NCBI GenBank assembly: GCA_907165135.1
Contig: OU015567.1
Span: 16,058,001-16,122,000 of the forward strand
Reading direction: 5' to 3'
From: Oikopleura dioica
Taxonomy: Eukaryota > Animalia > Chordata
Length of the DNA: 64,000 bases
Shown here piece after piece: positions 2,716 to 60,201 of this stretch; the stretch's first letter is position 1; each line of letters opens with the position of its first letter. The position numbers and the translations under genes are program-made. The notes under the pieces were generated by a model that worked only from the letters and a program-made list of their open reading frames with translations, made no database searches and was not told the DNA's origin.

Positions 2716-2806
2716 TTAATTCTTTGCCCTGTTTTGTTCATTGTTCTGAGAACAGCCAAATTTGAGGCTTTAATAAGCCAAATTTCAGTTTTCACCCGAT
2801 TTTCAG

Positions 2807-9891: not shown

Positions 9892-11201
9892 TGATACGGA
9901 AGCGGCTGTCCTGCAATTTATGCGCGTTCTCTAACTCTAGAATGCCAAGCTAAAAATGACGAGAATCAAATTTTTTAATTTGCGTGGTTTCATTTGTGAT
10001 TTGAATGAGAAAAAGAAGCACGGCGCGCGGTTAAATACGGCGAGATTGAATCAATGTTTTTGAACGAGCGGTTGTTTTTGAGCTTTTGAAAAGCTTTTGT
10101 TTTTGAAATCAAGGAAGAAAGCCCAAGGCCATCAAAGCAGTTTTTCTTTCGGGAAATCCTTACGGATCGTATTCTTGCCGATTTAGAGCTGAGCTTGTCG
10201 AGCTTGCCGAGCAAGTTATGATCGTTTATCTTTTCGAGCCGGCGCCGCGTGTGAAGAGTTCATAAAACGCAAATTATAATTTTTGATAAAAATAAACAAA
10301 GAATAAATTTACAGTCATTTAAACTTCTCACTATGTGACCGTAGAAATGACTGTAAAATAAAAACGAATAAAAGAAATAAAGAATATGTACAAAATAAGA
10401 AATAAATATTTAAACTTAAATTTGGTCAGGATTCTAGTTAAAATATTTTTTTTCGAATTTAAAGAATAGAAGAAATCCAAGGAACGTACCCGGGGAGAGT
10501 TACTGTCGCGGTTCACATCGTATCTTCTCTTACGACTCGCTACTTTGCGACAAGCGGGCCTTCTGACATAGAAAAGGACCCGTTCCCACGGCATCGCGAG
10601 TGATACGGCGATATATCGGTTCGTTGAAGTAGTAGAAGTTGTTAAGAGCGTTGTAGGCGTCCTCGTTGTTGAAATTGAATCGTAAGCTGCACGGTCAATA
10701 ATTGAACTGTAAAATCGCAAGACGTGATAATAAAAAGATCGAATATTAAAACGAAGCACGGTATTGCGAGGTACTATTTGTTTGATGAAATGACGTCGAA
10801 TTGCACTAGAAAAGTCAGAAACAAATTAAGATTTTTCGAAGTATGCGTACATACACATTAATCCTAGACAGAACCCTTAATTAATTTCCGACCCGTTGAT
10901 TATGATGAGAGCATGTGAGCATTCCAATGAAAGATAGAAAAGACCAAAAGAATAAGATAATGAGATGATAACGAATTGATGTTTTGGGTCAGTCTGGCTC
11001 GTTAAAACTGACCGTCTTTTTTATCGTGTTTAGAAAACTACCGTGAAATGATTTTTTACGAAAAAAACTGAGAAATCAATTTGGTGATACCAAGCTGATA
11101 AAACAGATTTTATAACCATGTAGACCCGAACTTGCGTAAATCTTTGGCCGTGAAAAAGAAGAGTTTGATTTTGTTTGAGGCGTTGTTCCCTAAGGATATC
11201 A
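9892..11201 (-). repeat. A1 3' LTR (1310 bp)
   Basis: Near-identical to 17243-18551; about four differences seen by eye. Confidence 0.95.
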
Positions 11202-11253
11202 CTGTGACCTTCCATGGGTCGCAAACGAGCATCTTTTTCGCCTTTCTTTTGTT

Positions 11254-15729: not shown

Positions 15730-17243
15730 GAAGATTGGTCTCCCTCAACTCGGGCCGCTCTGTAAATTCTATCGGGATTCTCGGGGCACGCAGTTTTCAT
15801 GTGGCCTTTTTTCTGACAAAAATGACAGGTACAGTTCTTTTCCTCTTTTGTGGACATTTTTTGTCCCAAAATTTTCGAAAAATGTCCACAAACTTGGGCA
15901 ACGTCTTCCGAAAAAATGTCCCATCGAACTCGCTTAAAATTTTTCGAGATTTGAGTACGCCGAATGGTTTTCTAGACTTTGCATTTATGCTCCTGAAAGA
16001 CTGACAAAGGCTCCTTTGTCTCTAGTTCAACCTTAAATTTTGTTTTTTTTTTCGTAAACAATGAACAACTCGATCTTGATTAGCAAGAATTAATCTCAAG
16101 ACAAAAAAAATTGTCTTTTTTATTTCTTTCCGCGAAAAAATGTCCACAAACTTGGAACAGCATCTTTTATAAAGTGTCCCACTTAAAGGCCTTACAATGG
16201 AAAAAATATCCACAAACTTGGGGTCCACAAAAAAGGAAAAAAACTGTAATAAAGGGACAATGCGATCTGAAATGGGTGTCTGTATTACAAAATCCACAAA
16301 AACGTCGAGGCCGTTGTCGATCAGCGTTCGGCGCGCCCAAATTTCGACTTTGAAAATTCCGTTGCTGGGGATTTTGGCGCGTCAAACTATGATCGTTGCG
16401 ACGATCTAATTCCAATTTTGAAATTGTGGCCGTTAACCTTTCAATCTGATCATGCAGCGCACATGCCCGCTTTTCCGCAGCCTCTTCCGATTTTTTCTGC
16501 TCCATTTTTAATTGAGCAATTTGGTCCTCAAAGGACATTGATGATTTTGAAATTAAATCGGAGGTTTGCTGAAAAAACGAGCCAAGTTTCGCGTCAATCT
16601 CAATTTGAGAAACTTTGGGAACCGTTTCATTCCTCTTTCTTTTGTCCAGGAATTTTGAAATCTCCTCGGGGGTTTTTTCAAGCATGCATTGATCCCGAAG
16701 AAAATTCTGCAATTCCGGAGTAAGAGACTTTCGAAATTGAGTGTCTATAATATATTCTCTTGCGTCCGGTTTTTGCGAAATCTTCTCCGCGACTGTTTTT
16801 ACACGTGACAAAAAAATCTCGAACTTCTCATTATTTTCACTTTTACGAGTGAGACTTTCTAGTTTTTCTTTATTCCGAAGAATTTTCTCTTCGGCCGATT
16901 CGTCGCCAAAAACGGATGTCAAAAAAGACAATTTTTCTTCGGCTGATTCAAATCCATAAAGGTCTTCTCCGTATTCTTTGAGAAAGCAGGGCTCACAAGA
17001 ATTGTAGACAAACGAACTCGAAAGACGCGCGAATTGGGCCTCAAGGTCAGATTTGTTTGTGGGCTTATTTTCCGCTAGCGACTTATCAAAAATCCATTTT
17101 GCTCGCTGAATTTTGTCTTTAATTGACGAGCTAATCAGATTAAATTCGTAATTTCTCATCCCTAATCTAATCATTTGATTTGGAGAAACCGAAAAAAGTG
17201 CATGACTTTTGTACAGTACCTCTTCAGGAGTAGCGGTCACCAT
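15717..17243 (-). pseudogene. gag: A1 Gag with two CCHC knuckles, interrupted by a MITE
   Basis: MVTATPEE... aligns with A2 Gag. The insertion splits the CPFIT|CHFC junction between the knuckles; the gag tail and stop lie at 15717-15829. Confidence 0.9.
15832..16246. mobile_element. 415-bp MITE, Tc1/mariner-like (TA TSD)
   Basis: 24-bp imperfect TIRs CAGTTCTTTTCCTCTTTTGTGGAC / GTCCACAAAAAAGGAAAAAAACTG. TA duplicated at 15830-31 and 16247-48; removing the insert restores the gag sequence seen in A2. Internal repeats of TCCACAAACTTGG; no coding capacity evident. Confidence 0.88.
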
Positions 17244-18551
17244 GATACGGAAGCGGCTGTCCTGCAATTTATGCGCGTTCTCTAACTCTAGAATGCCAAG
17301 CTAAAAATGACGAGAATCAAATTTTTTAATTTGCGTGGTTTTATTTGTGATTTGAATGAGAAAAAGAAGCACGGCGCGCGGTTAAATACGGCGAGATTGA
17401 ATCAATGTTTTTGAACGAGCGGTTGTTTTTGAGCTTTTGAAAAGCTTTTGTTTTTGAAATCAAGGAAGAAAGCCCAAGGCCATCAAAGCAGTTTTTCTTT
17501 CGGGAAATCCTTACGGATCGTATTCTTGCCGATTTAGAGCTGAGCTTGTCGAGCTTGCCGAGCAAGTTATGATCGTTTATCTTTTCGAGCCGGCGCCGCG
17601 TGTGAAGAGTTCATAAAACGCAAATTATAATTTTTGATAAAAATAAACAAAGAATAAATTTACAGTCATTTAAACTTCTCACTATGTGACCGTAGAAATG
17701 ACTGTAAAATAAAAACGAATAAAAGAAATAAAGAATATGTACAAAATAAGAAATAAATATTTAAACTTAAATTTGGTCAGGATTCTAGTTAAAATATTTT
17801 TTTTCGAATTTAAAGAATAGAAAAAATCCAAGGAACGTACCCGGGGAGAGTTACTGTCGCGGTTCACATCGTATCTTCTCTTACGACTCGCTACTTTGCG
17901 ACAAGCGGGCCTTCTGACATAGAAAAGGACCCGTTCCCACGGCATCGCGAGTGATACGGCGATATATCGGTTCGTTGAAGTAGTAGAAGTTGTTAAGAGC
18001 GTTGTAGGCGTCCTCGTTGTTGAAATTAAATCGTAAGCTGCACGGTCAATAATTGAACTGTAAAATCGCAAGACGTGATAAATAAAAAGATCGAATATTA
18101 AAACGAAGCACGGTATTGCGAGGTACTATTTGTTTGATGAAATGACGTCGAATTGCACTAGAAAAGTCAGAAACAAATTAAGATTTTTCGAAGTATGCGT
18201 ACATACACATTAATCCTAGACAGAACCCTTAATTAATTTCCGACCCGTTGATTATGATGAGAGCATGTGAGCATTCCAATGAAAGATAGAAAAGACCAAA
18301 AGAATAAGATAATGAGATGATAACGAATTGATGTTTTGGGTCAGTCTGGCTCGTTAAAACTGACCGTCTTTTTATCGTGTTTAGAAAACTACCGTGAAAT
18401 GATTTTTATCAAAAAAACTGAGAAATCAATTTGGTGATACCAAGCTGATAAAACAGATTTTATAACCATGTAGACCCGAACTTGCGTAAATCTTTGGCCG
18501 TGAAAAAGAAGAGTTTGATTTTGTTTGAGGCGTTGTTCCCTAAGGATATCA
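17243..18551 (-). repeat. A1 5' LTR (1309 bp)
   Basis: Direct repeat of 9892-11201; followed on the minus strand by TGGTGACC. Confidence 0.95.
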
Positions 18552-21139
18552 TTTTCAGATGATTTTCAGGTCATAAAAATCATAGAAAAAAAATCAACAA
18601 AAATTCTGATGCGTTTTTTGGCGTTTTCAGATGATTTTCAGGTCATGAAAATAAAGAAAAAATCAACAAAAATTCTGATGCGTTTTTTGGCGTTTTCAGA
18701 TGATTTTCAGGTCATGAAAATAAAGAAAAATCAAGAAAAATTCTGATGCGTTTTTTGGCGTTTTCAGATGAAATTCAGGTCATAAAAATCAAAAAAATCA
18801 AGAAAAATTCTGATGCGTTTTTTGGCGTTTTAAGATGATTTTCAATTCATAAATTTCAAAAAAAATCAAGAAAAATTCTGATGCGTTTTTTGGCGTTTTC
18901 AGATGATTTTCAGGTCATAAAAATCAAAGAAAAAAAATCAAGAAAAATTTTGAAGCGTTTTTTGGCGTTTTCAGATGATTTTTAGGTCATAAAAATCAAA
19001 AAAAGAAAAGAAAAATTCTGATGCGTTTTTTGGCATTTTCAGATGATTTTCAGGCCATAAAAATCAAAAAAAAAAATCAAGAAAAATTCTGATGCGTTCT
19101 CTGACGTTTTTAGATGATTTTCAGGTCATAAAAATCAAAAAAAAAAATCAAGAAAAATTCTGATGCGTTTTTTGGCGTTTTCAGATGATTTTTGGTCATA
19201 AACATCAAACAAAAATCAACAAAAATTCTGATGCGTTTTTTGGCGTTTTCAGATGATTTTCAGGTCATGAAAATAAAGAAAAAATCAAGAAAAATCCTGA
19301 TGCGTTTTTTGGCGTTTTCAGATAAAATTCAGGTCATAAAAATCAAAAAAAATCAAGAAAAATTCTGATGCGTTTTTTGGCGTTTTAAGATGATTTTCAA
19401 TTCATAAATTTCAAAAAAAATCAAGAAAAATTCTGATGCGTTTTTTGGCGTTTTCAGATGATTTTCAGGTCATAAAAATCATAGAAAAAAAATCAAGAAA
19501 AATTTTGAAGCGTTTTTTGGCGTTTTCAGATGAAATTCAGGTCATAAAAATCAAAAAATAAAATCAAGAAAAATTCTGATGCGTTCTCTGACGTTTTCAG
19601 ATGATTTTCAGGTCATAAAAATCAAAAAAAAAAATCAAGAAAAATTCTGATGCGTATTTTGGCGTTTTCAGATGATTTTGGTCATAAACATCAAACAAAA
19701 ATCAACAAAAATTCTGATGCGTTTTTTGGCGTTTTCAGATGATTTTCAGGTCATGAAAATAAAGAAAAAATCAACAAAAATTCTGATGCGTTTTTTGGCG
19801 TTTTCAGATGATTTTCAGGTCATGAAAATAAAGAAAAATCAAGAAAAATTCTGATGCGTTTTTTGGCGTTTTCAGATGAAATTCAGGTCATAAAAATCAA
19901 AAAAAATCAAGAAAAATTCTGATGCGTTTTTTGGCGTTTTAAGATGATTTTCAATTCATAAATTTCAAAAAAAATCAAGAAAAATTCTGATGCGTTTTTT
20001 GGCGTTTTCAGATGATTTTCAGGTCATAAAAATCAAAGAAAAAAAATCAAGAAAAATTTTGAAGCGTTTTTTGGCGTTTTCAGATGATTTTTAGGTCATA
20101 AAAATCAAAAAAAAAGAAAAGAAAAATTCTGATGCGTTTTTTGGCGTTTTCAGATGATTTTCAGGCCATAAAAATCATAACAAAATCAAGAAAAATTCTG
20201 ATGCGTTTTTTGGCGTTTTTAGATGATTTTCAGTTCATAAAAATCAAAAAAAATATCAAGAAATATTCTGATGCGTTTTTTGGCATTTTCCGATGATTTT
20301 CAGGTCATTAAAATCATAAAAAAAAATCAAGAAAAATTCTGATGCGTTTTTTGGCGTTTTCAGATGATATAAAGGTCATAAAAATCAAAAAAAAATCAAG
20401 GAAAATTCTGATGCATTTTTTGGCGTTTTCAGATGATTTTCAGGTCATAAAAATCAAAAAAAAATCAAGAAAAATTCTGATGCGTTTTTTGGCGTTTTCA
20501 GATGATTTTTAGGTCATTTAAATCAAAAAAAAATCAAGGAAAATTCTGATGCGTTTTTTGGCGTTTTCAGATGATTTTCAGGTCATAAAAATAAAAAAAA
20601 AATCAAGAAAAATTCTGTTGCGTTTTTCGGCGTTTTCAGATGATTTTTAGTTCATGAAAATCAAAAAAAATCAAGAAAAATTCTTATGCGTTTTTTTTGC
20701 GTTTTCAGATGATTTTCAGGTGATAAAAATAAAATCAAGGAAAATTCTGATGCGTTTTTGAGCATTTTCAGATGATTTTCAGGTCATAAAAATCAAAAAA
20801 TAAAATCAAGAAAAATTCTGATGCGTTCTCTGACGTTTTCAGATGATTTTCAGGTCATAAAAATCAAAAAAAAAAAATCAAGAAAAATTCTGATGCGTTT
20901 TTTGGCGTTTTCAGATGATTTTTGGTCATAAACATCAAACAAAAATCAACAAAAATTCTGATGCGTTTTTTGGCGTTTTCAGATGATTTTCAGGTCATGA
21001 AAATAAAGAAAAAATCAAGAAAAATTCTGATGCGTTTTTTGGCGTTTTCAGATGAAATTCAGGTCATAAAAATCAAAAAAAATCAAGAAAAATTCTGATG
21101 CGTTTTTTGGCGTTTTAAGATGATTTTCAATTCAGAAAT
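18552..21139 (+). repeat. ~69-bp satellite array, segment 2
   Basis: Same monomer and variants; resumes in register after the TSD. Confidence 0.98.
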
Positions 21140-22347
21140 TGATATCCTTAGGGAACAACGCCTCAAGCCAAATAAAAAATTTTTATTTCACGGCCAAATA
21201 TTTACGCCAATTCGGTTCTACGTTAGTTTAAATTTGTCTTGTCAGCTTGGTATCACCAAATTGATCAGACATATTTGCAAAAATCATTTCACGATATTCT
21301 ACTTAAAATGAAAAGATGGTCAGTTTTAACGAGCCAGATTGACCCAAAATTGTCTTATCATCATGTCATCTCCTTACGATCTATACGTTCTATCATTGGA
21401 ATGCTCATATGCTCTCATCATAATACTTTTCTAGTGCAATCTGATGTCAATTCATCCAAAAATATGCTATTTGCAAAACTGCATGTTTAATCTATTTATC
21501 GATATTTCTTATCATTGCTTTGCGATTTTTAAAGTTCGATTATTGACAGTGCATACGATTCAACTTCTACAACAAGAAAGTCGTCAACATCTTCTTCAAC
21601 AACAACTACTCCAAGGAGCCGATAAACCGTCGTATCATCTCGGTGCCGTGGGGTCGGACAAACTCTATGTCAGGGCGTCCGCTTGTCGCAAATTAGCTCA
21701 TCCGTAAGAGAAGATACGGTGCGAACCGCGACAGTAACTTCCCCCCGGGTATGTTCCTTGGAATTTGCTTCTTCTGTGATTTCAATTTTGATAAATTCAT
21801 TTTATAAAATCCTGACCAAATTTTATTCAATTTATTTGTTAAAATTTTGTATATATTCTTTTTACTTTTCTCATCCTTTTTTTATTTCAACCATAATTAA
21901 CAGTCACTTCTACGGTCACATAGTGAGAAGTTTAAGTGGCTGTTATTATTTTCTGCTTTTTATTTTGAAAAAATTAATTTGCGTTTTATCTCGTCACGCG
22001 CGGCGCCGGCTCCCGAAACCTTTGAAAATAACTTGCTTGGCAAGTTCGATCAGCTCGTCTTCCGAAAAGAAATCGATCCGAAAGGATTTCCCGCAAGAAA
22101 AACCGCTAAAGAAAGCCACGGGCTCTCTTCCTTGTTTTCAAAAGAAAAATTGTTTTTCAAAAACAACCGCTTGTTCAAAAACACTGATCAAATCTCGCTG
22201 CTATTTAACCCCGCGTCGCGCCTTTTTCAGTCATTCAAATCACAAATAAAACCACGCAAATTTAAAATTTGATTCTCGATATTTTGGCTTGGCATTCTAG
22301 AGTTAGAGATCGAGCAAAATTCTTGCAGGACAGCCGCTTCCGTATCA
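21140..22347 (+). repeat. A2a 5' LTR (1208 bp)
   Basis: Repeated at 27959, 32242 and 39065; AATAAA at 22245-22250. Confidence 0.95.
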
Positions 22348-23456
22348 TGGTGACCCCAACTCCTGAAGAGGTACTGTACAAGAGTCATGCGCTTTTTTCG
22401 GTTTCCCCAAATCAGATGATTAGATTAGGAATGAGAAATTTCGAATTCAATTTGATTAATTCTACAATTAAAGACAAATTACAGCGTGCAAAATGGATTT
22501 TTGAAAAATCTCTGGCGGAAAATAAACCCGAAAACAAAGAGGACCTCGAGGCTCAATTTTCGCGCCTTTCAAGCTCTTTTGTTTATAATTCATGCGAGCC
22601 GGAATTTCTTAGGGAATACGGGGAAGATCTTTATGGATTTGAATCAGCTGAGGAAAAATTGTCTTTTTTGACGTCTGTTTTTGGCGACGAATCGCCCGAG
22701 GAAAAGATCCTTCGAAACAAAGAAAAAATGGAAAATCTCACCCGAAAGAGCGAGAACAATGAAAAATTCGAGATATTTTTGTCACGTGTTAAAACTGTCG
22801 CGGAGAAAATTACGCAGAAACCGGACGCGAGAGAATACATTATCGACGCGCAATTTAGAAAATCGCTCACGCCTGAACTGCAGAATTTTCTTCGCGATCA
22901 GTGTATGCTTGAAAAAACACCCGAGGAAATATCCAAATTTCTTGACAAAAGAAAACGAAATGAGACTATCCCCAAAATTGCCCAAATCGAAATTGACGCG
23001 AAACTTGGCTCGTTTTTCCAGTCGACTTCCGACTTAATTTCAAAATCGACAATGTCCTTTGAGGATCAAATTTCTCAATTGAAAATTGAACAGAAAAAAT
23101 CAGAAGAGGCGGCGGAAAAACGGGCGAGTGCGCTTCATGATCAAATTGAAAAACTAACGGCAACAATTGCAAAATTAGAAGTTGATCGCCGCAACGATCA
23201 GAGTTTGACGCGTCAAAATAACCAGCAACGGAATTTTCAAAGTCGAAATTTGGGCGCGCCAAACCCGGATCGGCCAAGGCCTCGACGATTTTGTGGATTT
23301 TGTAACACAGACACTCATTTTAGATCGCATTGCCCCTTTATTACCTGTCATTTTTGTCAGAAAAAAGGCCACATGAAAACAGCTTGCCCCGATAATCCCG
23401 ATAGAATTTACAGAGCTGCTCGGGTCGAGGGAGAAGAAACTTCAAAAAACGAGTAA
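22347..23456 (+). CDS. gag: A2a Gag, intact, two CCHC zinc knuckles
   Basis: MVTPTPEE...; CGFCNTDTHFRSHC and CHFCQKKGHMKTAC. The first ATG in the frame is at 22347; the track's 22269 start is a TTG inside the LTR. Confidence 0.92.
   Translation: MVTPTPEEVLYKSHALFSVSPNQMIRLGMRNFEFNLINSTIKDKLQRAKWIFEKSLAENKPENKEDLEAQFSRLSSSFVYNSCEPEFLREYGEDLYGFESAEEKLSFLTSVFGDESPEEKILRNKEKMENLTRKSENNEKFEIFLSRVKTVAEKITQKPDAREYIIDAQFRKSLTPELQNFLRDQCMLEKTPEEISKFLDKRKRNETIPKIAQIEIDAKLGSFFQSTSDLISKSTMSFEDQISQLKIEQKKSEEAAEKRASALHDQIEKLTATIAKLEVDRRNDQSLTRQNNQQRNFQSRNLGAPNPDRPRPRRFCGFCNTDTHFRSHCPFITCHFCQKKGHMKTACPDNPDRIYRAARVEGEETSKNE
22348..22355 (+). promoter_or_regulatory. Putative primer-binding site (TGGTGACC) overlapping the gag start
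   Basis: TGG directly after the LTR end; only TGGTG is shared by all four subfamilies; cognate tRNA not identified. Confidence 0.55.
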
Positions 23457-23491
23457 ATGGAACTGAAAGCCCTGGTCAGGCACCAGTTCCA
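23444..23491 (+). promoter_or_regulatory. -1 ribosomal frameshift signal (A2a)
   Basis: A_AAA_AAC at 23444-23450, 7-nt spacer, stem TGGAACTG (23458-65) / CAGTTCCA (23484-91); the -1 frame is open from here into pol. Confidence 0.85.
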
Positions 23492-26400
23492 AGGACTTGT
23501 TCAATTTTTCGCATTGGATTACAATATTTTGTAGAAATGACAGTTTTTTCAAAAAAAATAAAAATGCTCGTCGATTCTGGCTCCCAACTTAACCTTTTGC
23601 CCAAATCATTTATTCCCGATAATGTTAAAATTCAAGCCCCTGATATTTTTGCTAAAAATTACGGTGGAGGAAGTATTGAAATTCTTGGTTTTGTCGAATG
23701 TGATTTTCATGTTAAAACGGAAAAATGGGGTAAATCGCGATTTTATATTGTAAATGACAATTGTCAGGCAATTCTCGGTTCGGAAGCACTTAAATCTAAT
23801 GAAATTATGATCAATCTTCATCGAAATCGTCTAGTTAAATCTGGTCCTATAGAGCGAATGGCGAATTTATGTAATAATGCATCAAAAAGCCCAACAGTTA
23901 ATAACATTGAGCAAGACAGTTTTTATGCCGTTTCTGAGCAAACTTACACATTTCGAGGCAAAAGTGAGCAAATTATCGATTTAAAAATTCCTCATTTGAA
24001 CAGATCAATGAATCTTTTTTTAGAAGAAAGCCAGCTTAAAAATTCGAAGCTAGAGTTAATAGAATCATTCCAGAGAGTTGATCCCGAGAATCCATTCTTT
24101 CGTATTCTTGTTATAAATCCCCTGAATTCTACAGTTAAAATTCCTGCTGGCACGGCCTTTGCAAAACTAGCGGAAATAGCTGAGATCGCCCAAATCAAGC
24201 CCTCAAAAAAAGATCTTAATTTTCTTCTTTCGCGGTTAAAAATAGGCAATATATCGAAAAAGAATAAGCCGGTACTTTTTGGTCTTCTTGCTATATACAC
24301 CCATTTATTTCAAGACGAGGACGACAATTTGCCTGTTTCGAACCTTGAAAAATTTTCGATTGAACTAGAGACTGATCGCCCGATTTGTAGCAATATGTAC
24401 AGAACGCCATATGCCTTGCGGGGAATAATGACCGGTACTACTACCTCCTACCTTGGGCAAGACATGATAATGCGAATTAATTCACCCTATAATAGCCCCG
24501 CGTTACTCGTAAGGAAAAAGAATGGTACATTCAGATTATGTATTGATTACAGGAAATTAAATTCGTTTACGCTCCAGCAGCATCATCCGTTGCAACAAAT
24601 TGAAGACGTTTTAGGGTATTTAGAAAATAGCATTATTTTTTCTTGTGTTGATTTGCGAAAAGGATTTCATCAGTGCCTCGTAGATGAGAAATCGCGAGAA
24701 AAACTAGCTTTTTCGACTGAAGACGGACAATTTACTTGGAAAAGGCTTCCAATGGGTCTCAAAAATGCCCCTATTCATTTCGCAAAATGCATGGATGTTA
24801 TTTTACGAGACACGCCGAAAACTCAAATTTGCGCTTATCTTGACGATTTAGTGGTCCATTCAAGAACGGAAGAAGAACATTTAGCCAATTTACGTAAATT
24901 ATTTCAAATTTTAGACCAAAATAATTTACGGATTAACATCGACAAAGCGAGTTTTTGAGCGAAAAGCATGCATTTTGGGTTTTGAAATTTTTGAAGGGAG
25001 AATACGGCCATCACAGGACAAGATCGAAGCGGTTAAAAATCTGTCTATTCCGAGAAACCGTGAGGAGGCACAATCACTTTTCGGACTTCTTTCGCAGCAC
25101 AGAAAATTTATTAAAAATTTTGCACCCCTGGGAGTAGAAATTTCAAAAACGTACAGAGGGTCATTTTGTTGGACAAAAGAGGCGACGATTTCACTCGAAA
25201 AGCTCAAAAGTATCATCTGCCATAACGCTCTTGAGCTCAAAATCCCCCCACTAAATGACGGTGTTTTCGTACTCGAGACAGACGCATCTAATCATAGTTT
25301 TGGTGGAGTTCTTTATCTTTGCGCGGAGCGAAATAAAAATCACCATCATTCTCATAATTGCCTACAACCGATAGCTTACCACTCGCTTAATTTTACGCCG
25401 GCACAACAGAAATACGGGACATTGGAAAAAGAACTTTATAGTGGGAAGACATGTATGGAACGATGGAGGGCTTATCTTGCTTATGTCGATTTTCTTTGGA
25501 TTACTGATAACTCTTGTGTTAAATACGCTCAATCCTTCAAGACAAATAATTTAAAAATTCAAAGATGGCTTACGGAGCTTCAGGGCTTTTCATTTCGAAT
25601 TGAACAGAGGAAAACTCATCAAATGAAAATAAGTGATTGCCTTAGTCGTAATACATTAAATTGTTCGATCAATCAAATAAAATTTACCCCTGAATCATTC
25701 GTAGAGTTTCAAAAATCTGACCCAGTATTATCACAAGTTAGACGTTTCGTTAGTATTGATAGATGGCCAAATAACCCACCAAGCGAGCTTTACCCATTCC
25801 TTTTACGTAGACCTGACCTTGAAATCCTTGGGTCTGGTGAGCTAGCTATAAATTCTCCAGCCTATCAAAAAAGATTTTGCGTCCCCGAGGCATTGACAGA
25901 GACAATTTGCAGCGAATATCATGATCACTCTCATTTCGGAGTCGATATTACAACCGAAAAAATTTCTAGAAAGTATTTTTGGCCGGGATTAAAAAATACA
26001 GTCGCGAGCTTTCTAAAATCATGTCACAAATGTCAAATTTCAAAACCAAATCTACAGCCTAACAAACCTCCTTTAGGCAAATCTGAAACACCAAGCAGCC
26101 CTTTTGAAAGTTTGTACTTTGATTTAATTGGCCCACTTCAAGAAACTGATTTTGGTCATAAATATATAATGGTGGTTATTGACGGTTTTAGCAAAAAAGT
26201 TTACGCGGAGCCCCTATCGTGCAAAAAATCGGATTATTTACTGCAAAAATTCCGGAGCGTATTATTTAGAAATCCAAAATTTCCAAAATATATGGTTTTA
26301 GATAACGCGAAGGAACACGTTCTGATTGAAAAATTTTTGAAAGAAAATAAAATTGGTGTACATTATATTCCCCGCGTCATCCCCAATCTAACGGGCAAGT

Positions 26401-27908: not shown

Positions 27909-27958
27909 AAAAAGATGGGCGATAAAGATGCTCGTTTGGGACCCATGGAAGGTCACAG

Positions 27959-29163
27959 TGATATCCTTAGGGAACAACGCCTCAAGCCAAATAAAAATTT
28001 TTATTTCACGGCCAAATATTTACGCCAATTCGGTTCTACGTTAGTTTAAATTTGTCTTGTCAGCTTGGTATCACCAAATTGATCAGACATATTTGCAAAA
28101 ATCATTTCACGATATTCTACTTAAAATGAAAAGATGGTCAGTTTTAACGAGCCAGATTGACCCAAAATTGTCTTATCATCATGTCATCTCCTTACGATCT
28201 ATACGTTCTATCATTGGAATGCTCATATGCTCTCATCATAATACTTTTCTAGTGCAATCTGATGTCAATTCATCCAAAAATATGCTATTTGCAAAACTGC
28301 ATGTTTAATCTATTTATCGATATTTCTTATCATTGCTTTGCGATTTTTAAAGTTCGATTATTGACAGTGCATACGATTCAACTTCTACAACAAGAAAGTC
28401 GTCAACATCTTCTTCAACAACAACTACTCCAAGGAGCCGATAAACCGTCGTATCATCTCGGTGCCGTGGGGTCGGACAAACTCTATGTCAGGGCGTCCGC
28501 TTGTCGCAAATTAGCTCATCCGTAAGAGAAGATACGGTGCGAACCGCGACAGTAACTTCCCCCGGGTATGTTCCTTGGAATTTGCTTCTTCTGTGATTTC
28601 AATTTTGATAAATTCATTTTATAAAATCCTGACCAAATTTTATTCAATTTATTTGTTAAAATTTTGTATATATTCTTTTTACTTTTCTCATCCTTTTTTT
28701 ATTTCAACCATAATTAACAGTCACTTCTACGGTCACATAGTGAGAAGTTTAAGTGGCTGTTATTATTTTCTGCTTTTATTTTGAAAAAATTAATTTGCGT
28801 TTTATCTCGTCACGCGCGGCGCCGGCTCCCGAAACCTTTGAAAATAACTTGCTTGGCAAGTTCGATCAGCTCGTCTTCCGAAAAGAAATCGATCCGAAAG
28901 GATTTCCCGCAAGAAAAACCGCTAAAGAAAGCCACGGGCTCTCTTCCTTGTTTTCAAAAGAAAAATTGTTTTTCAAAAACAACCGCTTGTTCAAAAACAC
29001 TGATCAAATCTCGCTGCTATTTAACCCCGCGTCGCGCCTTTTTCAGTCATTCAAATCACAAATAAAACCACGCAAATTTAAAATTTGATTCTCGTTATTT
29101 TGGCTTGGCATTCTAGAGTTAGAGATCGAGCAAAATTCTTGCAGGACAGCCGCTTCCGTATCA
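27959..29163 (+). repeat. A2a 3' LTR
   Basis: Near-identical to the 5' LTR. Confidence 0.95.
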
Positions 29164-32100: not shown

Positions 32101-32241
32101 GTTTTTAGATGAAATTCAGGTCATAAAAATCAAAAAAATCAAGAAAAATTCTGATGCGTTTTTTGGCGTTTTAAGATGATTTTCAATTCATAAATTTCAA
32201 AAAAAATCAAGAAAAATTCTGATGCGTTTTTAGGCGTTTTC
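29164..32241 (+). repeat. ~69-bp satellite array, segment 3
   Basis: Same monomer; the start matches the variant order seen at ~7515-9500. Confidence 0.98.
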
Positions 32242-33449
32242 TGATATCCTTAGGGAACAACGCCTCAAGCCAAATAAAAAATTTTTATTTCACGGCCAAA
32301 TATTTACGCCAATTCGGTTCTACGTTAGTTTAAATTTGTCTTGTCAGCTTGGTATCACCAAATTGATCAGACATATTTGCAAAAATCATTTCACGATATT
32401 CTACTTAAAATGAAAAGATGGTCAGTTTTAACGAGCCAGATTGACCCAAAATTGTCTTATCATCATGTCATCTCCTTACGATCTATACGTTCTATCATTG
32501 GAATGCTCATATGCTCTCATCATAATACTTTTCTAGTGCAATCTGATGTCAATTCATCCAAAAATATGCTATTTGCAAAACTGCATGTTTAATCTATTTA
32601 TCGATATTTCTTATCATTGCTTTGCGATTTTTAAAGTTCGATTATTGACAGTGCATACGATTCAACTTCTACAACAAGAAAGTCGTCAACATCTTCTTCA
32701 ACAACAACTACTCCAAGGAGCCGATAAACCGTCGTATCATCTCGGTGCCGTGGGGTCGGACAAACTCTATGTCAGGGCGTCCGCTTGTCGCAAATTAGCT
32801 CATCCGTAAGAGAAGATACGGTGCGAACCGCGACAGTAACTTCCCCCCGGGTATGTTCCTTGGAATTTGCTTCTTCTGTGATTTCAATTTTGATAAATTC
32901 ATTTTATAAAATCCTGACCAAATTTTATTCAATTTATTTGTTAAAATTTTGTATATATTCTTTTTACTTTTCTCATCCTTTTTTTATTTCAACCATAATT
33001 AACAGTCACTTCTACGGTCACATAGTGAGAAGTTTAAGTGGCTGTTATTATTTTCTGCTTTTTATTTTGAAAAAATTAATTTGCGTTTTATCTCGTCACG
33101 CGCGGCGCCGGCTCCCGAAACCTTTGAAAATAACTTGCTTGGCAAGTTCGATCAGCTCGTCTTCCGAAAAGAAATCGATCCGAAAGGATTTCCCGCAAGA
33201 AAAACCGCTAAAGAAAGCCACGGGCTCTCTTCCTTGTTTTCAAAAGAAAAATTGTTTTTCAAAAACAACCGCTTGTTCAAAAACACTGATCAAATCTCGC
33301 TGCTATTTAACCCCGCGTCGCGCCTTTTTCAGTCATTCAAATCACAAATAAAACCACGCAAATTTAAAATTTGATTCTCGTTATTTTGGCTTGGCATTCT
33401 AGAGTTAGAGATCGAGCAAAATTCTTGCAGGACAGCCGCTTCCGTATCA
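32242..33449 (+). repeat. A2b 5' LTR
   Basis: Direct repeat of 39065-40270. Confidence 0.95.
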
Positions 33450-39014: not shown

Positions 39015-39064
39015 AAAAAGATGGGCGATAAAGATGCTCGTTTGGGACCCATGGAAGGTCACAG

Positions 39065-40270
39065 TGATATCCTTAGGGAACAACGCCTCAAGCCAAATAA
39101 AAATTTTTATTTCACGGCCAAATATTTACGCCAATTCGGTTCTACGTTAGTTTAAATTTGTCTTGTCAGCTTGGTATCACCAAATTGATCAGACATATTT
39201 GCAAAAATCATTTCACGATATTCTACTTAAAATGAAAAGATGGTCAGTTTTAACGAGCCAGATTGACCCAAAATTGTCTTATCATCATGTCATCTCCTTA
39301 CGATCTATACGTTCTATCATTGGAATGCTCATATGCTCTCATCATAATACTTTTCTAGTGCAATCTGATGTCAATTCATCCAAAAATATGCTATTTGCAA
39401 AACTGCATGTTTAATCTATTTATCGATATTTCTTATCATTGCTTTGCGATTTTTAAAGTTCGATTATTGACAGTGCATACGATTCAACTTCTACAACAAG
39501 AAAGTCGTCAACATCTTCTTCAACAACAACTACTCCAAGGAGCCGATAAACCGTCGTATCATCTCGGTGCCGTGGGGTCGGACAAACTCTATGTCAGGGC
39601 GTCCGCTTGTCGCAAATTAGCTCATCCGTAAGAGAAGATACGGTGCGAACCGCGACAGTAACTTCCCCCGGGTATGTTCCTTGGAATTTGCTTCTTCTGT
39701 GATTTCAATTTTGATAAATTCATTTTATAAAATCCTGACCAAATTTTATTCAATTTATTTGTTAAAATTTTGTATATATTCTTTTTACTTTTCTCATCCT
39801 TTTTTTATTTCAACCATAATTAACAGTCACTTCTACGGTCACATAGTGAGAAGTTTAAGTGGCTGTTATTATTTTCTGCTTTTTATTTTGAAAAAATTAA
39901 TTTGCGTTTTATCTCGTCACGCGCGGCGCCGGCTCCCGAAACCTTTGAAAATAACTTGCTTGGCAAGTTCGATCAGCTCGTCTTCCGAAAAGAAATCGAT
40001 CCGAAAGGATTTCCCGCAAGAAAAACCGCTAAAGAAAGCCACGGGCTCTCTTCCTTGTTTTCAAAAGAAAAATTGTTTTTCAAAAACAACCGCTTGTTCA
40101 AAAACACTGATCAAATCTCGCTGCTATTTAACCCCGCGTCGCGCCTTTTTCAGTCATTCAAATCACAAATAAAACCACGCAAATTTAAAATTTGATTCTC
40201 GTTATTTTGGCTTGGCATTCTAGAGTTAGAGATCGAGCAAAATTCTTGCAGGACAGCCGCTTCCGTATCA
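39065..40270 (+). repeat. A2b 3' LTR
   Basis: Direct repeat of 32242-33449. Confidence 0.95.
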
Positions 40271-40364: not shown

Positions 40365-42124
40365 TGATACGAATAGAGGAAAGAACACAAGAAAAAAATG
40401 AAAAATTGAATATCCTAGTCACATAAATATTTTCGCCAATTAGGTTGATTAGGCATGAATTTCACAGATATAATTTCCGACGATTTTCGGAGCCAAATCT
40501 CGGATGCTTGCATGAATTCATAAATCTCTATCTTTCCCTCATAACGTACGCGTTATTTCACAATTCAAAGGCACATTAGCCACCCGTTTCGGCGGTTCTT
40601 TATTTAAACTCTTTCTAGTGCTCACTACTTCTTTTGTTTAATTTATTAACTGGTTATTATTATTGATGAATCAAGCTGACTCTTCTATGTCTTCAAAACG
40701 ATGATGGCAATTCTTCTTGACGATAAAAATCAATTGGCTTTTTACTACTTCGACGGAGCTGTTGCATGAATTTCATCCTCTAGCTGAGTTCCGCTTTAAG
40801 CGGCTTGACAGTGTGACCCCGTGCTCCTCGGGATGGCGCTGTCTGTAAGTGCTCCTAGGTAGGCAATATTGATTGAACACCTTTCTGGCTCGCTTTAGGA
40901 AAGCTGACCACTCTCCTCAAACCGACAGAATTGCAGCTTCAACAATGGCGGCGACTTCTCTGACAACAACGACGACTACGCAATGGACTGACAACGATTA
41001 TTGGAACTGGCTTTGGAAAAGTATTGATAAAAATTCATTAAATTCTATCAAAAAAGGGATACGGCCACATAGTGGGAAGTTGAACTTTTTTGATATGATT
41101 TATTTCTTGCGATAAAATTTGAGCGCACGTGGCTGTTGGACCGAAATCGAAATCAACGAAGAAAAACAAATGCGCGAAAGCGCTGCACCTTATTTGGAAA
41201 GAAAAACATCGGCGCGAAATGCGCTGCGCCTTATTTGGAAAGAATAGCACCTGCGCGAAACGCGAAATTAAAATTTGAAAATTTGAAAAATCACTCTCTC
41301 CATACTCAAAATAATACAGCCACGTTTTGAAATTTTGGCGTCATTCTTTGCAAGATTCTAGCTTAGAGAGCATTTGAGCAGCAAAACGGTATCATGGTGA
41401 ACACGCAAGACTCCAACTTCAAGGTAAATAAAATGCCCGAAGAATTACTTTTGCCACTTTTCCTTCCCTCAATTCTCGTCAATTTTTCGGCCTAATATGC
41501 TGTCGTATGAATTTACAATTTCTAAGAATAATTTGAGCGACAAAATATCCGCGATGCGAAAATTTTCGACAAAAGTATTAAGGATCACAATCGAGAGTCT
41601 GACCGTAATAATTTAGAAAAAGCTTTTGACAGACAAGTCGTAGACTGCATTCGCAATAATTGCTCACACGAATTTATGAATAATTATGGGCGGGAAATGG
41701 CAAATTTCGAAAATATGGATGAAGTTTTTGATTTTCTGGAATCTGTTTTCGGAAGTGAGTCTGAGGATGAAAAGCGAGAGCGGGCGGGAGTCGAACTCGA
41801 AAATCTTTGTCGAAGATCGGAAATGAATGAGAAGTTTTCGTCATTTTTGACAAGAATTAAAACCGTCAAGAGCTTATTTCTGATAAACAAGATGCAAGAG
41901 ACTTTATTATTAATGCTCACTTTATGAAAAGCCTTGAGCCAGCGAACAAGTCGTTTTTACGTGATCATGGTGTCAGTAAAAAGAGTGCTCAGGAAATTGC
42001 CACATTTTTGGACTCACGGGAGCGGTTTTTGAGTGTGAATGTTTCCTCGATCGAGTCAGCAAATCTTGCGTCCTTTGTTGATCGAACGAGCGAACTTTTG
42101 GATTCAAAATTGACTCAGATGGAG
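40365..42124 (+). mobile_element. 3'-truncated B1 element: 5' LTR (40365-41394) plus partial gag
   Basis: Reverse complement of 49270-51023 apart from small indels; gag breaks after ...CAGATGGAG and joins satellite with no second LTR or TSD. Confidence 0.93.
41394..42124 (+). pseudogene. gag: Truncated, frameshifted B1 gag
   Basis: ATG GTG AAC ACG at 41394; several 1-bp indels relative to the 49996 copy. Confidence 0.88.
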
Positions 42125-49996: not shown

Positions 49997-51023
49997 GATA
50001 CCGTTTTGCTGCTCAAATGCTCTCTAAGCTAGAATCTTGCAAAGAATGACGCCAAAATTTCAAAACGTGGCTGTATTATTTTGAGTATGGAGAGAGTGAT
50101 TTTTCAAATTTTCAAATTTTAATTTCGCGTTTCGCGCAGGTGCTATTCTTTCCAAATAAGGCGCAGCGCATTTCGCGCCGATGTTTTTCTTTCCAAATAA
50201 GGTGCAGCGCTTTCGCGCATTTGTTTTTCTTCGTTGATTTCGATTTCGGTCCAACAGCCACGTGCGCTCAAATTTTATCGCAAGAAATAAATCATATCAA
50301 AAAGTTCAACTTCCCACTATGTGGCCGTATCCCTTTTTGATAGAATTTAATGAATTTTTATCAATACTTTTCCAAAGCCAGTTCCAATAATCGTTGTCAG
50401 TCCATTGCGTAGTCGTCGTTGTTGTCAGAGAAGTCGCCGCCATTGTTGAAGCTGCAATTCTGTCGGTTTGAGGAGAGTGGTCAGCTTTCCTAAAGCGAGC
50501 CAGAAAGGTGTTCAATCAATATTGCCTACCTAGGAGCACTTACAGACAGCGCCATCCCGAGGAGCACGGGGTCACACTGTCAAGCCGCTTAAAGCGGAAC
50601 TCAGCTAGAGGATGAAATTCATGCAACAGCTCCGTCGAAGTAGTAAAAAGCCAATTGATTTTTATCGTCAAGAAGAATTGCCATCATCGTTTTGAAGACA
50701 TAGAAGAGTCAGCTTGATTCATCAATAATAATTACCAGTTAATAAATTAAACAAAAGAAGTAGTGAGCACTAGAAAGAGTTTAAATAAAGAACCGCCGAA
50801 ACGGGTGGCTAATGTGCCTTTGAATTGTGAAATAACGCGTACGTTATGAGGGAAAGATAGAGATTTATGAATTCATGCAAGCATCCGAGATTTGGCTCCG
50901 AAAATCGTCGGAAATTATATCTGTGAAATTCATGCCTAATCAACCTAATTGGCGAAAATATTTATGTGACTGGGATATTCAATTTTTCATTTTTTTCTTG
51001 TGTTCTTTCCTCTATTCGTATCA
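49996..51023 (-). repeat. B1 5' LTR
   Basis: Direct repeat of 43271-44298. Confidence 0.95.
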
Positions 51024-52362: not shown

Positions 52363-53369
52363 TGATACCGTTGGATTGAAACTCTTTTAAATAAATAACT
52401 CTAGCTCTGACTCTGCAAAATCTGCAAGAAATTTAACACAAAATTCGGCGGTGTTACGGTTATATTGAGTATGAAGAGAATGAGGCAGAAATGAAAATTT
52501 TTCAAATTTCGCAGCGCGCGCAGCTGCAGCGAATTTCCAAGCGTGTTTTTCTTTCCAAATAAGGAGACGCGCGAATTGTTTTTCTCGTTGTTTTCAAATT
52601 TTCGTTTCACCATTTTTACGTAACCGCCACCGCCAAGAGAGTTCATTTTAGAAAATCAAATTTCTCACTATGTGACCCAGATCATTTCTAAAATAAACCC
52701 TCTTTATTTTCGTTTTCGTCTATCAAAAAGCAAGTCCAGTAAGCAAGTCCATAGTCGTTTCCGTTGCGTTTGTCGTCGTCGTTGTAGTAGTAGTCGTAAT
52801 CGTAAAAGCCGTCGCCGCTGCCAAAGTCGTCAGCACAGTGCATTCCGTCGTTATTGTAGAAGATGGCCAGTCGTTCTAAATCGAGCCAGAAAGGAGTTTT
52901 GACAACTTTGCCTACCTAGGAGCAGTTACTGATACCGCCATCCCGCGGTGCACGGGGTCACAGTATCAAGCCTCAAAGAGGAACTCGGCTAGGGGTTGAA
53001 TCCATCAAGCAGCAGCAAATCGTAAAAACCTGTTGAGCTATTGAAATCAAGGAGAAAAATATCAGAAATAGTAAATAAGGAGATGAGTTGTGATTTTCAT
53101 GCAACCTAAAAGTGTGAGAGAAAAACGCCCAAGGGGCGGTGGCTAATGTGCCTTCAGGGAATGAAATTACGCGTACGTAACAGAGAACTACAGTCATGTC
53201 TGACTCAGATTGACCTTCTACAATTTTTTCTTTTGAATTTGCGATAAGGCTCAATATCGCTTTTAAATGTATGTGATTTTCATGCACATAATCAACCAAA
53301 TTGGCGCAAATGGACCGTGAGTTTTTCGATTCAATTTTTATTTTTTGTGTTCTTTCCTTATCGTTATCA
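52363..53369 (-). repeat. B2 3' LTR
   Basis: Direct repeat of 59195-60201. Confidence 0.95.
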
Positions 53370-59195: not shown

Positions 59196-60201
59196 GATAC
59201 CGTTGGATTGAAACTCTTTTAAATAAATAACTCTAGCTCTGACTCTGCAAAATCTGCAAGAAATTTAACACAAAATTCGGCGGTGTTACGGTTATATTGA
59301 GTATGAAGAGAATGAGGCAGAAATGAAAATTTTTCAAATTTCGCAGCGCGCGCAGCTGCAGCGAATTTCCAAGCGTGTTTTTCTTTCCAAATAAGGAGAC
59401 GCGCGAATTGTTTTTCTCGTTGTTTTCAAATTTTCGTTTCACCATTTTTACGTAACCGCCACCGCCAAGAGAGTTCATTTTAGAAAATCAAATTTCTCAC
59501 TATGTGACCCAGATCATTTCTAAAATAAACCCTCTTTATTTTCGTTTTCGTCTATCAAAAAGCAAGTCCAGTAAGCAAGTCCATAGTCGTTTCCGTTGCG
59601 TTTGTCGTCGTCGTTGTAGTAGTAGTCGTAATCGTAAAAGCCGTCGCCGCTGCCAAAGTCGTCAGCACAGTGCATTCCGTCGTTATTGTAGAAGATGGCC
59701 AGTCGTTCTAAATCGAGCCAGAAAGGAGTTTTGACAACTTTGCCTACCTAGGAGCAGTTACTGATACCGCCATCCCGCGGTGCACGGGGTCACAGTATCA
59801 AGCCTCAAAGAGGAACTCGGCTAGGGGTTGAATCCATCAAGCAGCAGCAAATCGTAAAAACCTGTTGAGCTATTGAAATCAAGGAGGAAAATATCAGAAA
59901 TAGTAAATAAGGAGATGAGTTGTGATTTTCATGCAACCTAAAAGTGTGAGAGAAAAACGCCCAAGGGGCGGTGGCTAATGTGCCTTCAGGGAATGAAATT
60001 ACGCGTACGTAACAGAGAACTACAGTCATGTCTGACTCAGATTGACCTTCTACAATTTTTTCTTTTGAATTTGCGATAAGGCTCAATATCGCTTTTAAAT
60101 GTATGTGATTTTCATGCACATAATCAACCAAATTGGCGCAAATGGACCGTGAGTTTTTCGATTCAATTTTTATTTTTTGTGTTCTTTCCTTATCGTTATC
60201 A
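59195..60201 (-). repeat. B2 5' LTR
   Basis: Direct repeat of 52363-53369. Confidence 0.95.

What the first reader, a model, noticed from the sequence alone, without database searches (positions are those of the whole stretch)
21611..21763. Covarying three-way-junction RNA shared by otherwise dissimilar A and B LTRs
Each LTR holds the same topology on the sense strand: closing stem with a bulge, hairpin P2, linker CTT, long stem P3 with an apical hairpin, linker (A/T)GTAA(C/G)T. A2: CCG-T-GGG/CCC-CGG, P2 CGGAC/GTCCG, CTT, GTCGC/GCGAC, apical CCGTA/TACGG, AGTAACT. A1 (10490-10591, minus): P2 CGGG..CCCG, apical TCGTA/TACGA. B1 (40777-40863): TCTAG..GAG/CTC-CTAGG, P2 CCGCT/AGCGG, CTT, GACAGTG/CGCTGTC, TGTAAGT. 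B2 (52915-52993, minus): P2 CCTC/GAGG, CTT, GATACTG/CGGTATC, AGTAACT. Stems change compensatorily while junction strands stay fixed, the pattern expected of a functional RNA. I could not match it to a ribozyme core I know. Function is open: translation element, packaging or dimerisation signal, RT-related element or self-cleaving RNA.
Basis: partly seen in the sequence, partly recalled or inferred. Interest (0 to 1): 0.82.

Follow-up and report, generated by a model that had tools for sequence, protein, structure and literature searches.

The report
Conserved RNA fold in retrotransposon LTRs
Every long terminal repeat of two families of Ty3/gypsy-type retrotransposons in this window carries the same ~80-105-base folded RNA module; relatives from marine metagenomes keep its stems through compensating base changes, so it is a real RNA element of unknown function that matches no Rfam family.

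Summary
I fetched about 40 related elements from unnamed, probably marine, metagenome contigs.

- **B type (9 different sequences):** 97% of base-pair cells pair, against 29-54% when partners are slid. 12 of 27 pairs show changes on both sides, and all three helices covary.
- **P2 and P3:** P2 keeps pairing in 15 different sequences. The P3 base stem has six different arm pairs in 22 copies, all Watson-Crick.
- **Strand:** two invariant U-G pairs fix the strand as sense.
- **A and B are linked:** a bridging subtype (D) combines B-like P2 flanks with an A-like P3. The motif also sits at the same distance from another conserved LTR island in all types.
- **Refinements:** some clades lack P2, and part of the "fixed linker" probably pairs with the UU next to the junction.
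- **No known family:** nothing matches in Rfam, and no tRNA was found.

The motif lies about 480 nt upstream of the presumed transcription start. It is therefore probably in U3, which forms the 3' UTR of the genomic RNA. My best guess is a protein-binding cis element for export, stability or packaging. No expression data exist.

The parts
21646..21749 (+). Motif copy, A2 5' LTR (the finding): P1, P2, P3 three-way junction
28464..28566 (+). Motif copy, A2 3' LTR (one C fewer in the P1 3' strand)
32748..32851 (+). Motif copy, A3 5' LTR (A3 is a duplicate of A2)
39570..39672 (+). Motif copy, A3 3' LTR
10489..10591 (-). Motif copy, A1 3' LTR
17840..17942 (-). Motif copy, A1 5' LTR
40780..40858 (+). 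Motif copy, B0 (truncated inverted B fragment), outer P1 to outer P1
43805..43883 (-). Motif copy, B1 3' LTR
50530..50608 (-). Motif copy, B1 5' LTR
52916..52992 (-). Motif copy, B2 3' LTR
59748..59824 (-). Motif copy, B2 5' LTR
21140..22348 (+). A2 5' LTR (1209 bp). The other A-type LTRs are 27959-29164, 32242-33450, 39065-40271 (+) and 9892-11201, 17243-18551 (-)
40365..41394 (+). B0 LTR. The other B-type LTRs are 43271-44298, 49996-51023, 52361-53369, 59193-60201 (-)
40859..40935 (+). B-type conserved stretch just 3' of the junction (rest of the 182-bp island). Sequence is conserved; I could not resolve a structure
21909..21930 (+). Second conserved LTR island (contains CACATAGTG), 150-250 nt after the motif in every LTR type. 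Used as a positional landmark
22202..22250 (+). Presumed core promoter and poly(A) block of the A2 LTR: A/T-rich box, start-like block, poly(A)-type hexamer. It places the motif in U3. Inference only

Best explanation
The motif is a cis-acting structured RNA module of the retrotransposon's own sense transcript, carried in the LTR.

Core architecture: a closing helix P1, about three unpaired bases, and a long hairpin P3 with a conserved internal loop. In three lineages (A, B, D) a hairpin P2 of free sequence sits in the 5' strand and turns the bulge into a three-way junction.

Location: the motif lies about 480 nt upstream of the presumed transcription start and 540-600 nt before the LTR end. 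It is therefore most likely in U3. It would then be transcribed only from the 3' LTR and sit in the ~1.2-kb 3' UTR of the full-length gag-pol RNA.

Likely action: I think it works after transcription as a docking platform for a protein. That protein would promote nuclear export or stability of the unspliced RNA, or its selection for packaging. The P3 interior differs between clades that share one genome, which hints at recognition by an element-encoded protein such as Gag.

Shown: the fold, its conservation, its strand and its LTR position.
Inferred: U3 placement, transcription and the protein-binding role.

My probabilities: real selected RNA structure about 0.9; located in U3 / 3' UTR about 0.65; export, stability or packaging class of function about 0.4.
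For: - **B type, all helices:** in 9 different sequences, 97.0% of 237 pair cells are standard pairs, against 29-54% with slid partners. 12 of 27 pairs have changes on both sides (0 of 500 shuffles reach this). P1 has 4 of 7 pairs covarying, and P3 has 6 of 13 with 100% pairing.
- **Independent prediction:** RNAalifold predicts P1 and P3 on the same alignment.
- **P2:** 15 different sequences show 45 extra consecutive pairs, against 10.5 +/- 3.8 in shuffles (0 of 20000). All four Watson-Crick types occur at pairs 3 and 4.
- **P3 base stem:** 22 copies carry 6 different arm pairs, 100% paired, against 18-49% when slid.
- **Strand:** two U-G pairs are invariant in all 9 B-type sequences and would be A-C on the other strand.
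- **Not coding:** stop codons occur in all three frames inside the motif.
- **Conserved above background:** it is the only blastn-alignable part of the B1 and B2 LTRs, and it is kept between elements whose RT-to-integrase cores are only about 50% identical.
- **A and B are linked:** subtype D is an intermediate. The B-only covariance model ranks the A2/A3 copies first among non-B hits in the window, in full register. It also ranks the D copy of L029 first in 85 kb of other loci. The spacing to the second LTR island is the same in all types.
- **U3 placement:** an A/T-rich box, a start-like block and a poly(A)-type hexamer are conserved near the 3' end of eight LTR types.
- **Precedent:** a structured RNA in U3 that acts in export is known, the 433-nt Rec response element (PMC11379458).
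Against: - There is no expression data of any kind. Transcription start, poly(A) site and even sense transcription across the motif are inferred from sequence resemblance only.
- Folding-energy z-scores are unremarkable.
- The sequence sets are small and related by descent. The shuffle control does not correct for phylogeny, although the slid-partner control does.
- The A type has only two variants.
- The B-only model hits the A copies at E = 0.64 and 3.2, which is not significant alone, and it misses A1.
- Elements with only gag and pol need no splicing, so the classical reason for an export element is weaker.
- Known packaging signals usually lie in the 5' leader.
- The host is unknown.
Confidence: 0.45

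Rival explanations
1. It is a 5'-leader element. Transcription would start upstream of the motif, so the motif lies in R or U5 and acts in the leader of the genomic RNA in dimerisation, packaging or translation control, as retroviral leader structures do.
For: - Three-way junctions are known in retroviral packaging leaders (established knowledge).
- A/T-rich stretches also occur upstream of the motif.
- No data fix the start site.
Against: - The conserved A/T-rich box, start-like block and poly(A)-type hexamer lie about 480 nt downstream of the motif.
- An upstream start would need an R region longer than 500 nt, or read-through of that poly(A) signal in the leader.
- No block upstream of the motif is conserved between A and B.
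Confidence: 0.15
2. It helps reverse-transcription initiation or 5'-3' bridging. As in yeast Ty3, where the primer tRNA also contacts U3 sequences at the 3' end of the RNA, the motif would bind the primer tRNA or the leader.
For: - The elements are Ty3/gypsy-type.
- The sequences after the LTR end differ between copies beyond the first 5-6 bases. This could mean a short primer-binding site that needs help.
Against: - A duplex search between motif and leader gave nothing consistent in 8 elements (z from -2.9 to +2.1).
- The primer tRNA is unknown, so complementarity could not be tested.
- The conserved parts are mostly base-paired within the motif.
Confidence: 0.1
3. It is a self-cleaving ribozyme or another RNA-processing signal inside the LTR transcript.
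For: - It is a three-way junction with conserved junction bases in a retroelement LTR.
- LTR-borne hammerheads exist in retrozymes (established knowledge).
- Computation cannot exclude a new catalytic class.
Against: - No Rfam family, including every curated self-cleaving class, matches at E up to 10 with permissive filters.
- P2 is absent in whole clades whose gag and pol genes are called as full-length single products.
- The P3 internal loop differs completely between the B type and the other types, so there is no common candidate core beyond UU, AA and about 3 bases.
Confidence: 0.07
4. It is a separate small or LTR-derived non-coding RNA acting in trans, for example in the biology of the satellite arrays where all copies sit.
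For: - Every element in the window is inserted in the 69-bp satellite.
- Target duplications recur at the same satellite bases.
Against: - No promoter or terminator features flank the motif consistently.
- There is no tRNA-like hit and no known small-RNA family hit.
- The motif type follows the pol clade, as expected of a cis element.
Confidence: 0.08
5. It is a DNA-level element (enhancer or palindromic factor sites), and the apparent covariation is a by-product of mirrored half-sites or shared ancestry.
For: - U3 regions hold enhancers.
- A nearby island shows a mirrored change that a palindromic DNA site would also give.
- The sequences are related by descent.
Against: - P1 strands pair across about 70-100 bases.
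- There are 27 nested pairs in three helices, with 12 double changes.
- Invariant U-G pairs would be mismatches in DNA and on the other strand.
- Slid-partner controls, which keep relatedness, collapse to 29-54% pairing.
Confidence: 0.05

Closest known systems
Rec response element (RcRE) of HERV-K(HML-2) and LTR-derived constitutive transport elements
   Same: A structured RNA inside the U3 part of the LTR, present at the 3' end of the unspliced RNA and acting after transcription (PMC11379458). That paper also shows an LTR-derived region acting as a factor-independent transport element.
   Different: - The RcRE is 433 nt and serves a virus with spliced mRNAs and an adaptor protein.
- Here the module is 80-105 nt, and the elements encode only gag and pol.
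- No sequence or model similarity was found.
- Export function is untested here.
Retroviral packaging and dimerisation leaders with three-way junctions
   Same: A multi-helix junction whose stems covary, and whose clade-specific loops could give self-recognition by Gag.
   Different: Those lie in the 5' leader next to the primer-binding site. This motif lies about 600 nt before the LTR end, probably in U3.
Bipartite primer-binding site of yeast Ty3
   Same: The same superfamily of elements. A U3 sequence at the RNA 3' end takes part in a replication step.
   Different: The Ty3 U3 part is a linear complement of the primer tRNA, not a covarying fold. Complementarity could not be tested here.
Hammerhead ribozymes in retrozyme LTRs
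   Same: A three-way junction RNA carried in an LTR.
   Different: No hit to any hammerhead or other ribozyme model. P2 is dispensable in some clades. The elements here are autonomous.

Membership tests
Structured cis-regulatory RNA of a retroelement (generic kind) | Secondary structure conserved through compensatory changes | tested here: met
Structured cis-regulatory RNA of a retroelement (generic kind) | Strand-specific, on the element's sense strand | tested here: met
   All 11 copies are in sense orientation. U-G pairs are invariant.
Structured cis-regulatory RNA of a retroelement (generic kind) | Present in the element's transcript | not testable with these tools
   No expression data. 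U3 placement is inferred.
Known self-cleaving ribozyme classes (hammerhead, HDV-like, twister, pistol, hatchet and others in Rfam) | Match to the family covariance model, meaning catalytic core plus fold | tested here: not met
   No hit at gathering score. No hit on the motif at E up to 10.
Known self-cleaving ribozyme classes | Site-specific self-cleavage | not testable with these tools
   Needs mapping of RNA ends.
tRNA or tRNA-like element | Cloverleaf recognised by a tRNA finder | tested here: not met
   ARAGORN found 0 genes in the window. No Rfam tRNA hit.
Splice donor embedded in a hairpin | Invariant GT at the same place in all members | tested here: not met
   A' and C relatives read TAGAACA at that place, with no GT. 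The elements have no third gene to splice to.
Retroviral transport elements (CTE, RTE, RcRE) | Lies in the 3' untranslated part or U3 of the unspliced RNA | tested here: inconclusive
   The position fits if the presumed start and poly(A) block is right.
Retroviral transport elements (CTE, RTE, RcRE) | Sequence or structure homology to a described element | tested here: not met
   No Rfam hit. Direct comparison with the viral sequences was not made, because fetching them is barred.
Retroviral transport elements (CTE, RTE, RcRE) | Binds an export factor and raises cytoplasmic RNA | not testable with these tools
   none
Protein-coding exon | Open frame kept across members | tested here: not met
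   Stops in all three frames within the B-type motif. The variable columns are the paired ones.

The most novel reading that the evidence does not exclude
The module is a new functional RNA class rather than one more docking site. It could be a new self-processing RNA that makes or trims the 3' end of the element's transcript. Or it could be an RNA determinant tied to this family's exclusive residence in a 69-bp satellite array. The optional P2 hairpin, flanked by two alternative UU partners for the invariant AA, could then act as a conformational switch.
Probability: 0.08. Interest if true: 0.85.

Novelty: new member of a known kind. Interest (0 to 1): 0.58.

Why it matters
Structured cis-acting RNAs are well studied in retroviruses but almost unknown in the U3 of LTR retrotransposons outside a few model elements.

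- This module is kept across elements whose polymerases have diverged to about 50% identity, while the rest of the LTR has become unalignable. It must therefore serve a step these elements cannot do without.
- It gives a compact, alignable marker for this retrotransposon family in marine eukaryote data.
- It offers a natural series (with and without P2, two kinds of P3 interior) for asking what such an RNA recognises.
- It is a candidate new Rfam family.

Tried and rejected
- **Hammerhead or other ribozyme:** the junction layout did not fit on either strand, and Rfam gave nothing.
- **Splice donor at GTAAGT/GTAACT:** rejected, because the A' and C relatives have no GT there and there is no env gene. 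The "third ORF" of A2/A3 is the C-terminal part of a pol broken by frame changes.
- **tRNA-like or Pol III gene:** no ARAGORN or Rfam hit, and no consistent T-run follows the motif.
- **Small conserved ORF after the motif:** short ORFs exist in B1, L001 and L025. Their frames differ relative to the conserved island, and A2 has none. Dropped.
- **Long-range pairing of the motif with the leader:** nothing consistent.
- **Pairing of B-type P3 bases with the second LTR island:** the mismatch in B1, L017, L018 and L035 is not compensated. Dropped.
- **Structure in the 80-90 conserved bases after the B-type junction:** no convincing helix (and by eye).
- **One alignment of all types with MAFFT:** it misaligns B against A and D, so cross-type counts were made by anchor-based scripts.
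- **B-only covariance model:** too sequence-bound to find the other types at significant E-values.
- **Host identification:** failed. Close relatives are all unnamed metagenome or Logan contigs. One run belongs to a European coastal marine metagenome survey. An Oikopleura origin was considered but found no support.
- **Literature:** no paper on such an LTR motif or on a 69-bp satellite with these elements.

Full report
**Setting**

The window is a mosaic of a 69-bp A/T-rich satellite and LTR retrotransposons inserted into it.
- Satellite blocks lie at 4716-9895, 18552-21140, 29161-32245, 42123-43270, 51024-52362 and 60202-62582.
- The elements encode gag and a pol with reverse transcriptase, RNase H and integrase domains in Ty3/gypsy order.
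- A family: A1 (minus strand, 9892-18551), A2 (21140-29164) and A3 (32242-40271).
- B family: the fragment B0 (40365-42128), B1 (minus, 43271-51023) and B2 (minus, 52361-60201).
- A2 and A3 lie in a 10.7-kb segmental duplication and are one insertion copied.
- LTR pairs are 99.5-99.9% identical, and 5-bp target duplications are visible.
- There is no env gene. The 430-residue "third ORF" of A2/A3 is the C-terminal part of pol, which in A1 is one 1460-residue ORF reaching the LTR.
- Gene state, counts only: A1 and B2 have uninterrupted gag and pol. A2 pol has 3 frame changes and A3 pol has 2. B1 gag has 1 frame change, and B1 pol has 1 frame change and 1 stop.

**The observation**

- A descriptor search finds one copy per LTR, 11 in all, always in the element's sense orientation, and none elsewhere in the window.
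- Each of the four variants folds by itself into the same closing helix P1, hairpin P2 and long hairpin P3. The folding energies are not unusual (z from -0.4 to -2.0).
- A and B LTRs share no blastn similarity. B1 and B2 LTRs share only a 182-bp island around the motif.

**Relatives**

The A1 pol has 43-69% identical relatives only in unnamed metagenome and Logan contigs.
- I fetched their contigs.
- One of the runs belongs to a European coastal marine metagenome survey (PMC11923592).
- Many contigs run through one LTR, so the LTR of each relative can be read.

**Four subtypes**

1. **B type:** B1 and B2 plus L011, L015, L016, L017, L018, L035 and L038.
2. **D type:** L020, L021/L037, L022 and L029. 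It is a three-way junction whose P2 has the same flanks as in B (TT, then CC...GG, then CTG). Its P3 has the sequence type of A (GTCGG ... CCGAC with the same internal-loop bases). After P3 it reads TGTAAGC, close to B1.
3. **A type:** A1 and A2, found only in the window.
4. **A' and C types:** A' is L001, L003, L005, L007 and L010. C is L002 and L025. Both keep P1 and P3 but have no P2 at the junction. The 16 bases TTGTCGCAAAGTAGCG are identical in A1 and the A' relatives.

The D type bridges A and B. In every type the motif also lies 150-250 nt before a second conserved island that contains CACATAGTG. The motifs are therefore positional homologues.

The motif type follows the pol clade. The B motif goes with B2-like pol (about 70% identity in the core). 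A' and L002 go with A1-like pol (64-66%). D and L025 have pol about 50-55% identical to both.

**Covariation**

- **B-type alignment (9 different sequences, 93 columns), with my structure.** 97.0% of 237 cells are standard pairs. With the 3' partner slid by 1-3 columns the figure is 29-54%. 12 of 27 pairs show changes on both sides (0 of 500 shuffles reach 12; slid versions give 0-3).
- **By helix.** P1 has 7 pairs, 4 of them covarying. Examples are CTAG/CTAG in B1 against CCGT/ACGG in L038, and GAG/CTC against GGG/CCC in L017 and L018. P3 has 13 pairs, all paired in all sequences, 6 of them covarying.
- **Independent prediction.** RNAalifold predicts P1 and P3 on its own. It misses P2 only because MAFFT misplaces the gaps there.
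- **P2.** I counted consecutive pairs from the two ends in 15 different sequences of types A, B and D. There are 45 pairs beyond the two fixed ones, against 10.5 +/- 3.8 after shuffling the interior (0 of 20000). Pairs 3 and 4 use all four Watson-Crick types.
- **P3 base stem.** In 22 copies of all types there are six different arm pairs (GACAG/CTGTC, GATAC/GTATC, ATCAC/GTGAT, AGCAG/CTGCT, GTCGG/CCGAC, GTCGC/GCGAC). All are fully Watson-Crick, against 18-49% pairing when slid.
- **GTCG-type P3 group (types A, A', C, D).** The stem itself is nearly invariant, with 1 of 5 pairs covarying. The weight of the evidence therefore rests on B, on P2 and on the comparison between types.
- **Strand.** Two U-G pairs are invariant in all nine B-type sequences. 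These cells, plus four more U-G cells in P1, would be mismatches on the opposite strand or in DNA.
- **Not coding.** Stops occur in all three frames of the motif.

**A and B compared directly**

A covariance model built from B-type sequences only was run without filters over the window. Its best hits outside B are the A2/A3 copies, aligned in full P1/P2/P3 register, at 11.2 bits (E = 0.64) and 8.8 bits (E = 3.2). In 85 kb of other loci its best hit is the D-type copy of L029 at 13.5 bits (E = 0.17). These E-values are not significant alone, and A1 is missed. Taken with the bridging subtype and the shared position, I take the common origin of the A and B motifs as established.

**Refinement of the fold**

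- After the P3 3' arm the copies read AGTAACT (A1, A2, B2, L018, L035), TGTAAGT (B1), TGTAACT (L011, L015, L016, L017, L038), TGTAAGC (D type) or TAGAACA (A', C).
- The two adjacent A's are present in all 22 copies.
- In the P2-less types the bases before P3 (GTT or TGTT) pair with AAC or AACA. P1 then runs up to a 3-base bulge.
- In the D type, folding pairs GCTT before P2 with AAGC.
- In B there is a TT on each side of P2, and either could pair with the AA.
- The P3 internal loop is conserved within the B type and within the GTCG-type P3 group (A, A', C, D), but it differs between the two.

**Position in the transcript (inference)**

The 3' ends of eight LTR types align on a block with three features:
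- an A/T-rich box (22202-22208 in A2);
- a conserved start-like block 29 nt later (22231-22236);
- a poly(A)-type hexamer (22245-22250).

This is the usual U3/R/U5 layout with a short R. It places the motif about 480 nt upstream of the start, in U3. The motif would then be transcribed from the 3' LTR as part of a 3' UTR of about 1.2 kb. No expression data were available to test this.

**Comparison with what is known**

- Rfam has no match at gathering scores, and none on the motif at E up to 10. ARAGORN finds no tRNA.
- A literature search found no description of such an LTR motif.
- The nearest known kind is the group of structured RNAs in or next to the 3' LTR that act after transcription. 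One example is the 433-nt Rec response element in U3 of HML-2, and another is an LTR-derived constitutive transport element (PMC11379458; other papers listed).
- Three-way junctions in retroviral packaging leaders and the U3 part of the Ty3 primer-binding site are further analogies from established knowledge.
- None of these is a family that this motif can be filed under.

**Verdict**

This is a real, selected RNA structure that matches no Rfam family and for which I found no description in the literature. Its function is open. I favour a protein-docking element in the 3' UTR for export, stability or packaging, at about 0.4. The clade-specific P3 interior hints at an element-encoded partner.

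- The covariance model and the alignment tools print consensus lines by themselves.
- **Fetched relatives.** The host of these elements is unknown. The contigs I fetched are unnamed environmental relatives found with the window's own pol protein. If the operators count such elements as viruses of animals, those calls should be read as slips.
- I did not scan the viral-contig collection with a motif pattern. I did not fetch any named virus or named element as a comparator.

Noticed in passing
window 4716-9895, 18552-21140, 29161-32245, 42123-43270, 51024-52362, 60202-62582: All elements sit in arrays of a 69-bp A/T-rich satellite. The 5-bp target duplications are TTTTC for both A1 and A3, TTTCA for B2 and CTGAT for B1. 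This suggests a preference for particular places in the monomer.
   Followed up: partly
window 18552-29233 and 29692-40364: A 10.7-kb segmental duplication (96.9% identity) of satellite plus element, which makes A2 and A3 one insertion. Both share the same one-base difference between their 5' and 3' LTR motif copies.
   Followed up: partly
window 21909-21930, 41058-41082 and one site in every other LTR: A second conserved LTR island contains CACATAGTG. The bases flanking its short palindrome change together: T..A in most copies, C..G in B1, L017, L018 and L035. This could be a 4-bp hairpin or a palindromic protein site.
   Followed up: partly
window 40540-40606 (B0 LTR); L022 459-499, L023 7106-7146, L025 4981-5020: A third island about 200 nt before the motif is shared by B, C and D LTRs but was not seen in A LTRs. 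It contains a short palindrome rich in CG.
   Followed up: no
window 21563-21610, 40935-41000; L001 5178-5205 and 5375-5440; L025 5395-5510: Runs of triplet-like repeats rich in AAC, GAC and ACG flank the motif, on one or both sides, in all LTR types. Short ORFs start in them, but their frames are not conserved.
   Followed up: partly
window 40859-40935 and the matching parts of B-type loci: About 80-90 further conserved bases follow the B-type junction, with invariant stretches. I could not find a helix supported by covariation.
   Followed up: partly
window 40365-42128: B0 is a truncated copy (5' LTR plus 734 bp) 99% identical to B1 but in the opposite orientation. It lies between A3 and a short satellite block.
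   Followed up: no
window 11254-12700 (A1 pol C-terminus) and equivalents: Pol continues for roughly 450-500 residues after the integrase core with no Pfam match. This long extension might relate to the satellite targeting.
   Followed up: no
window 22349-22365, 17226-17242 (-), 41395-41412, 59176-59192 (-): The sequences right after the 5' LTRs all start TGGTG but differ from the sixth or seventh base on, between A1, A2, B0 and B2. Either the primer-binding site is short or the primers differ.
   Followed up: no
window 1-4715 and 62583-64000: Two further partial retroelements. The first has reverse transcriptase and RNase H but no motif, and it ends in a 165-bp tandem repeat (3756-4383). The second is a B-related internal fragment at about 74% identity.
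   Followed up: no
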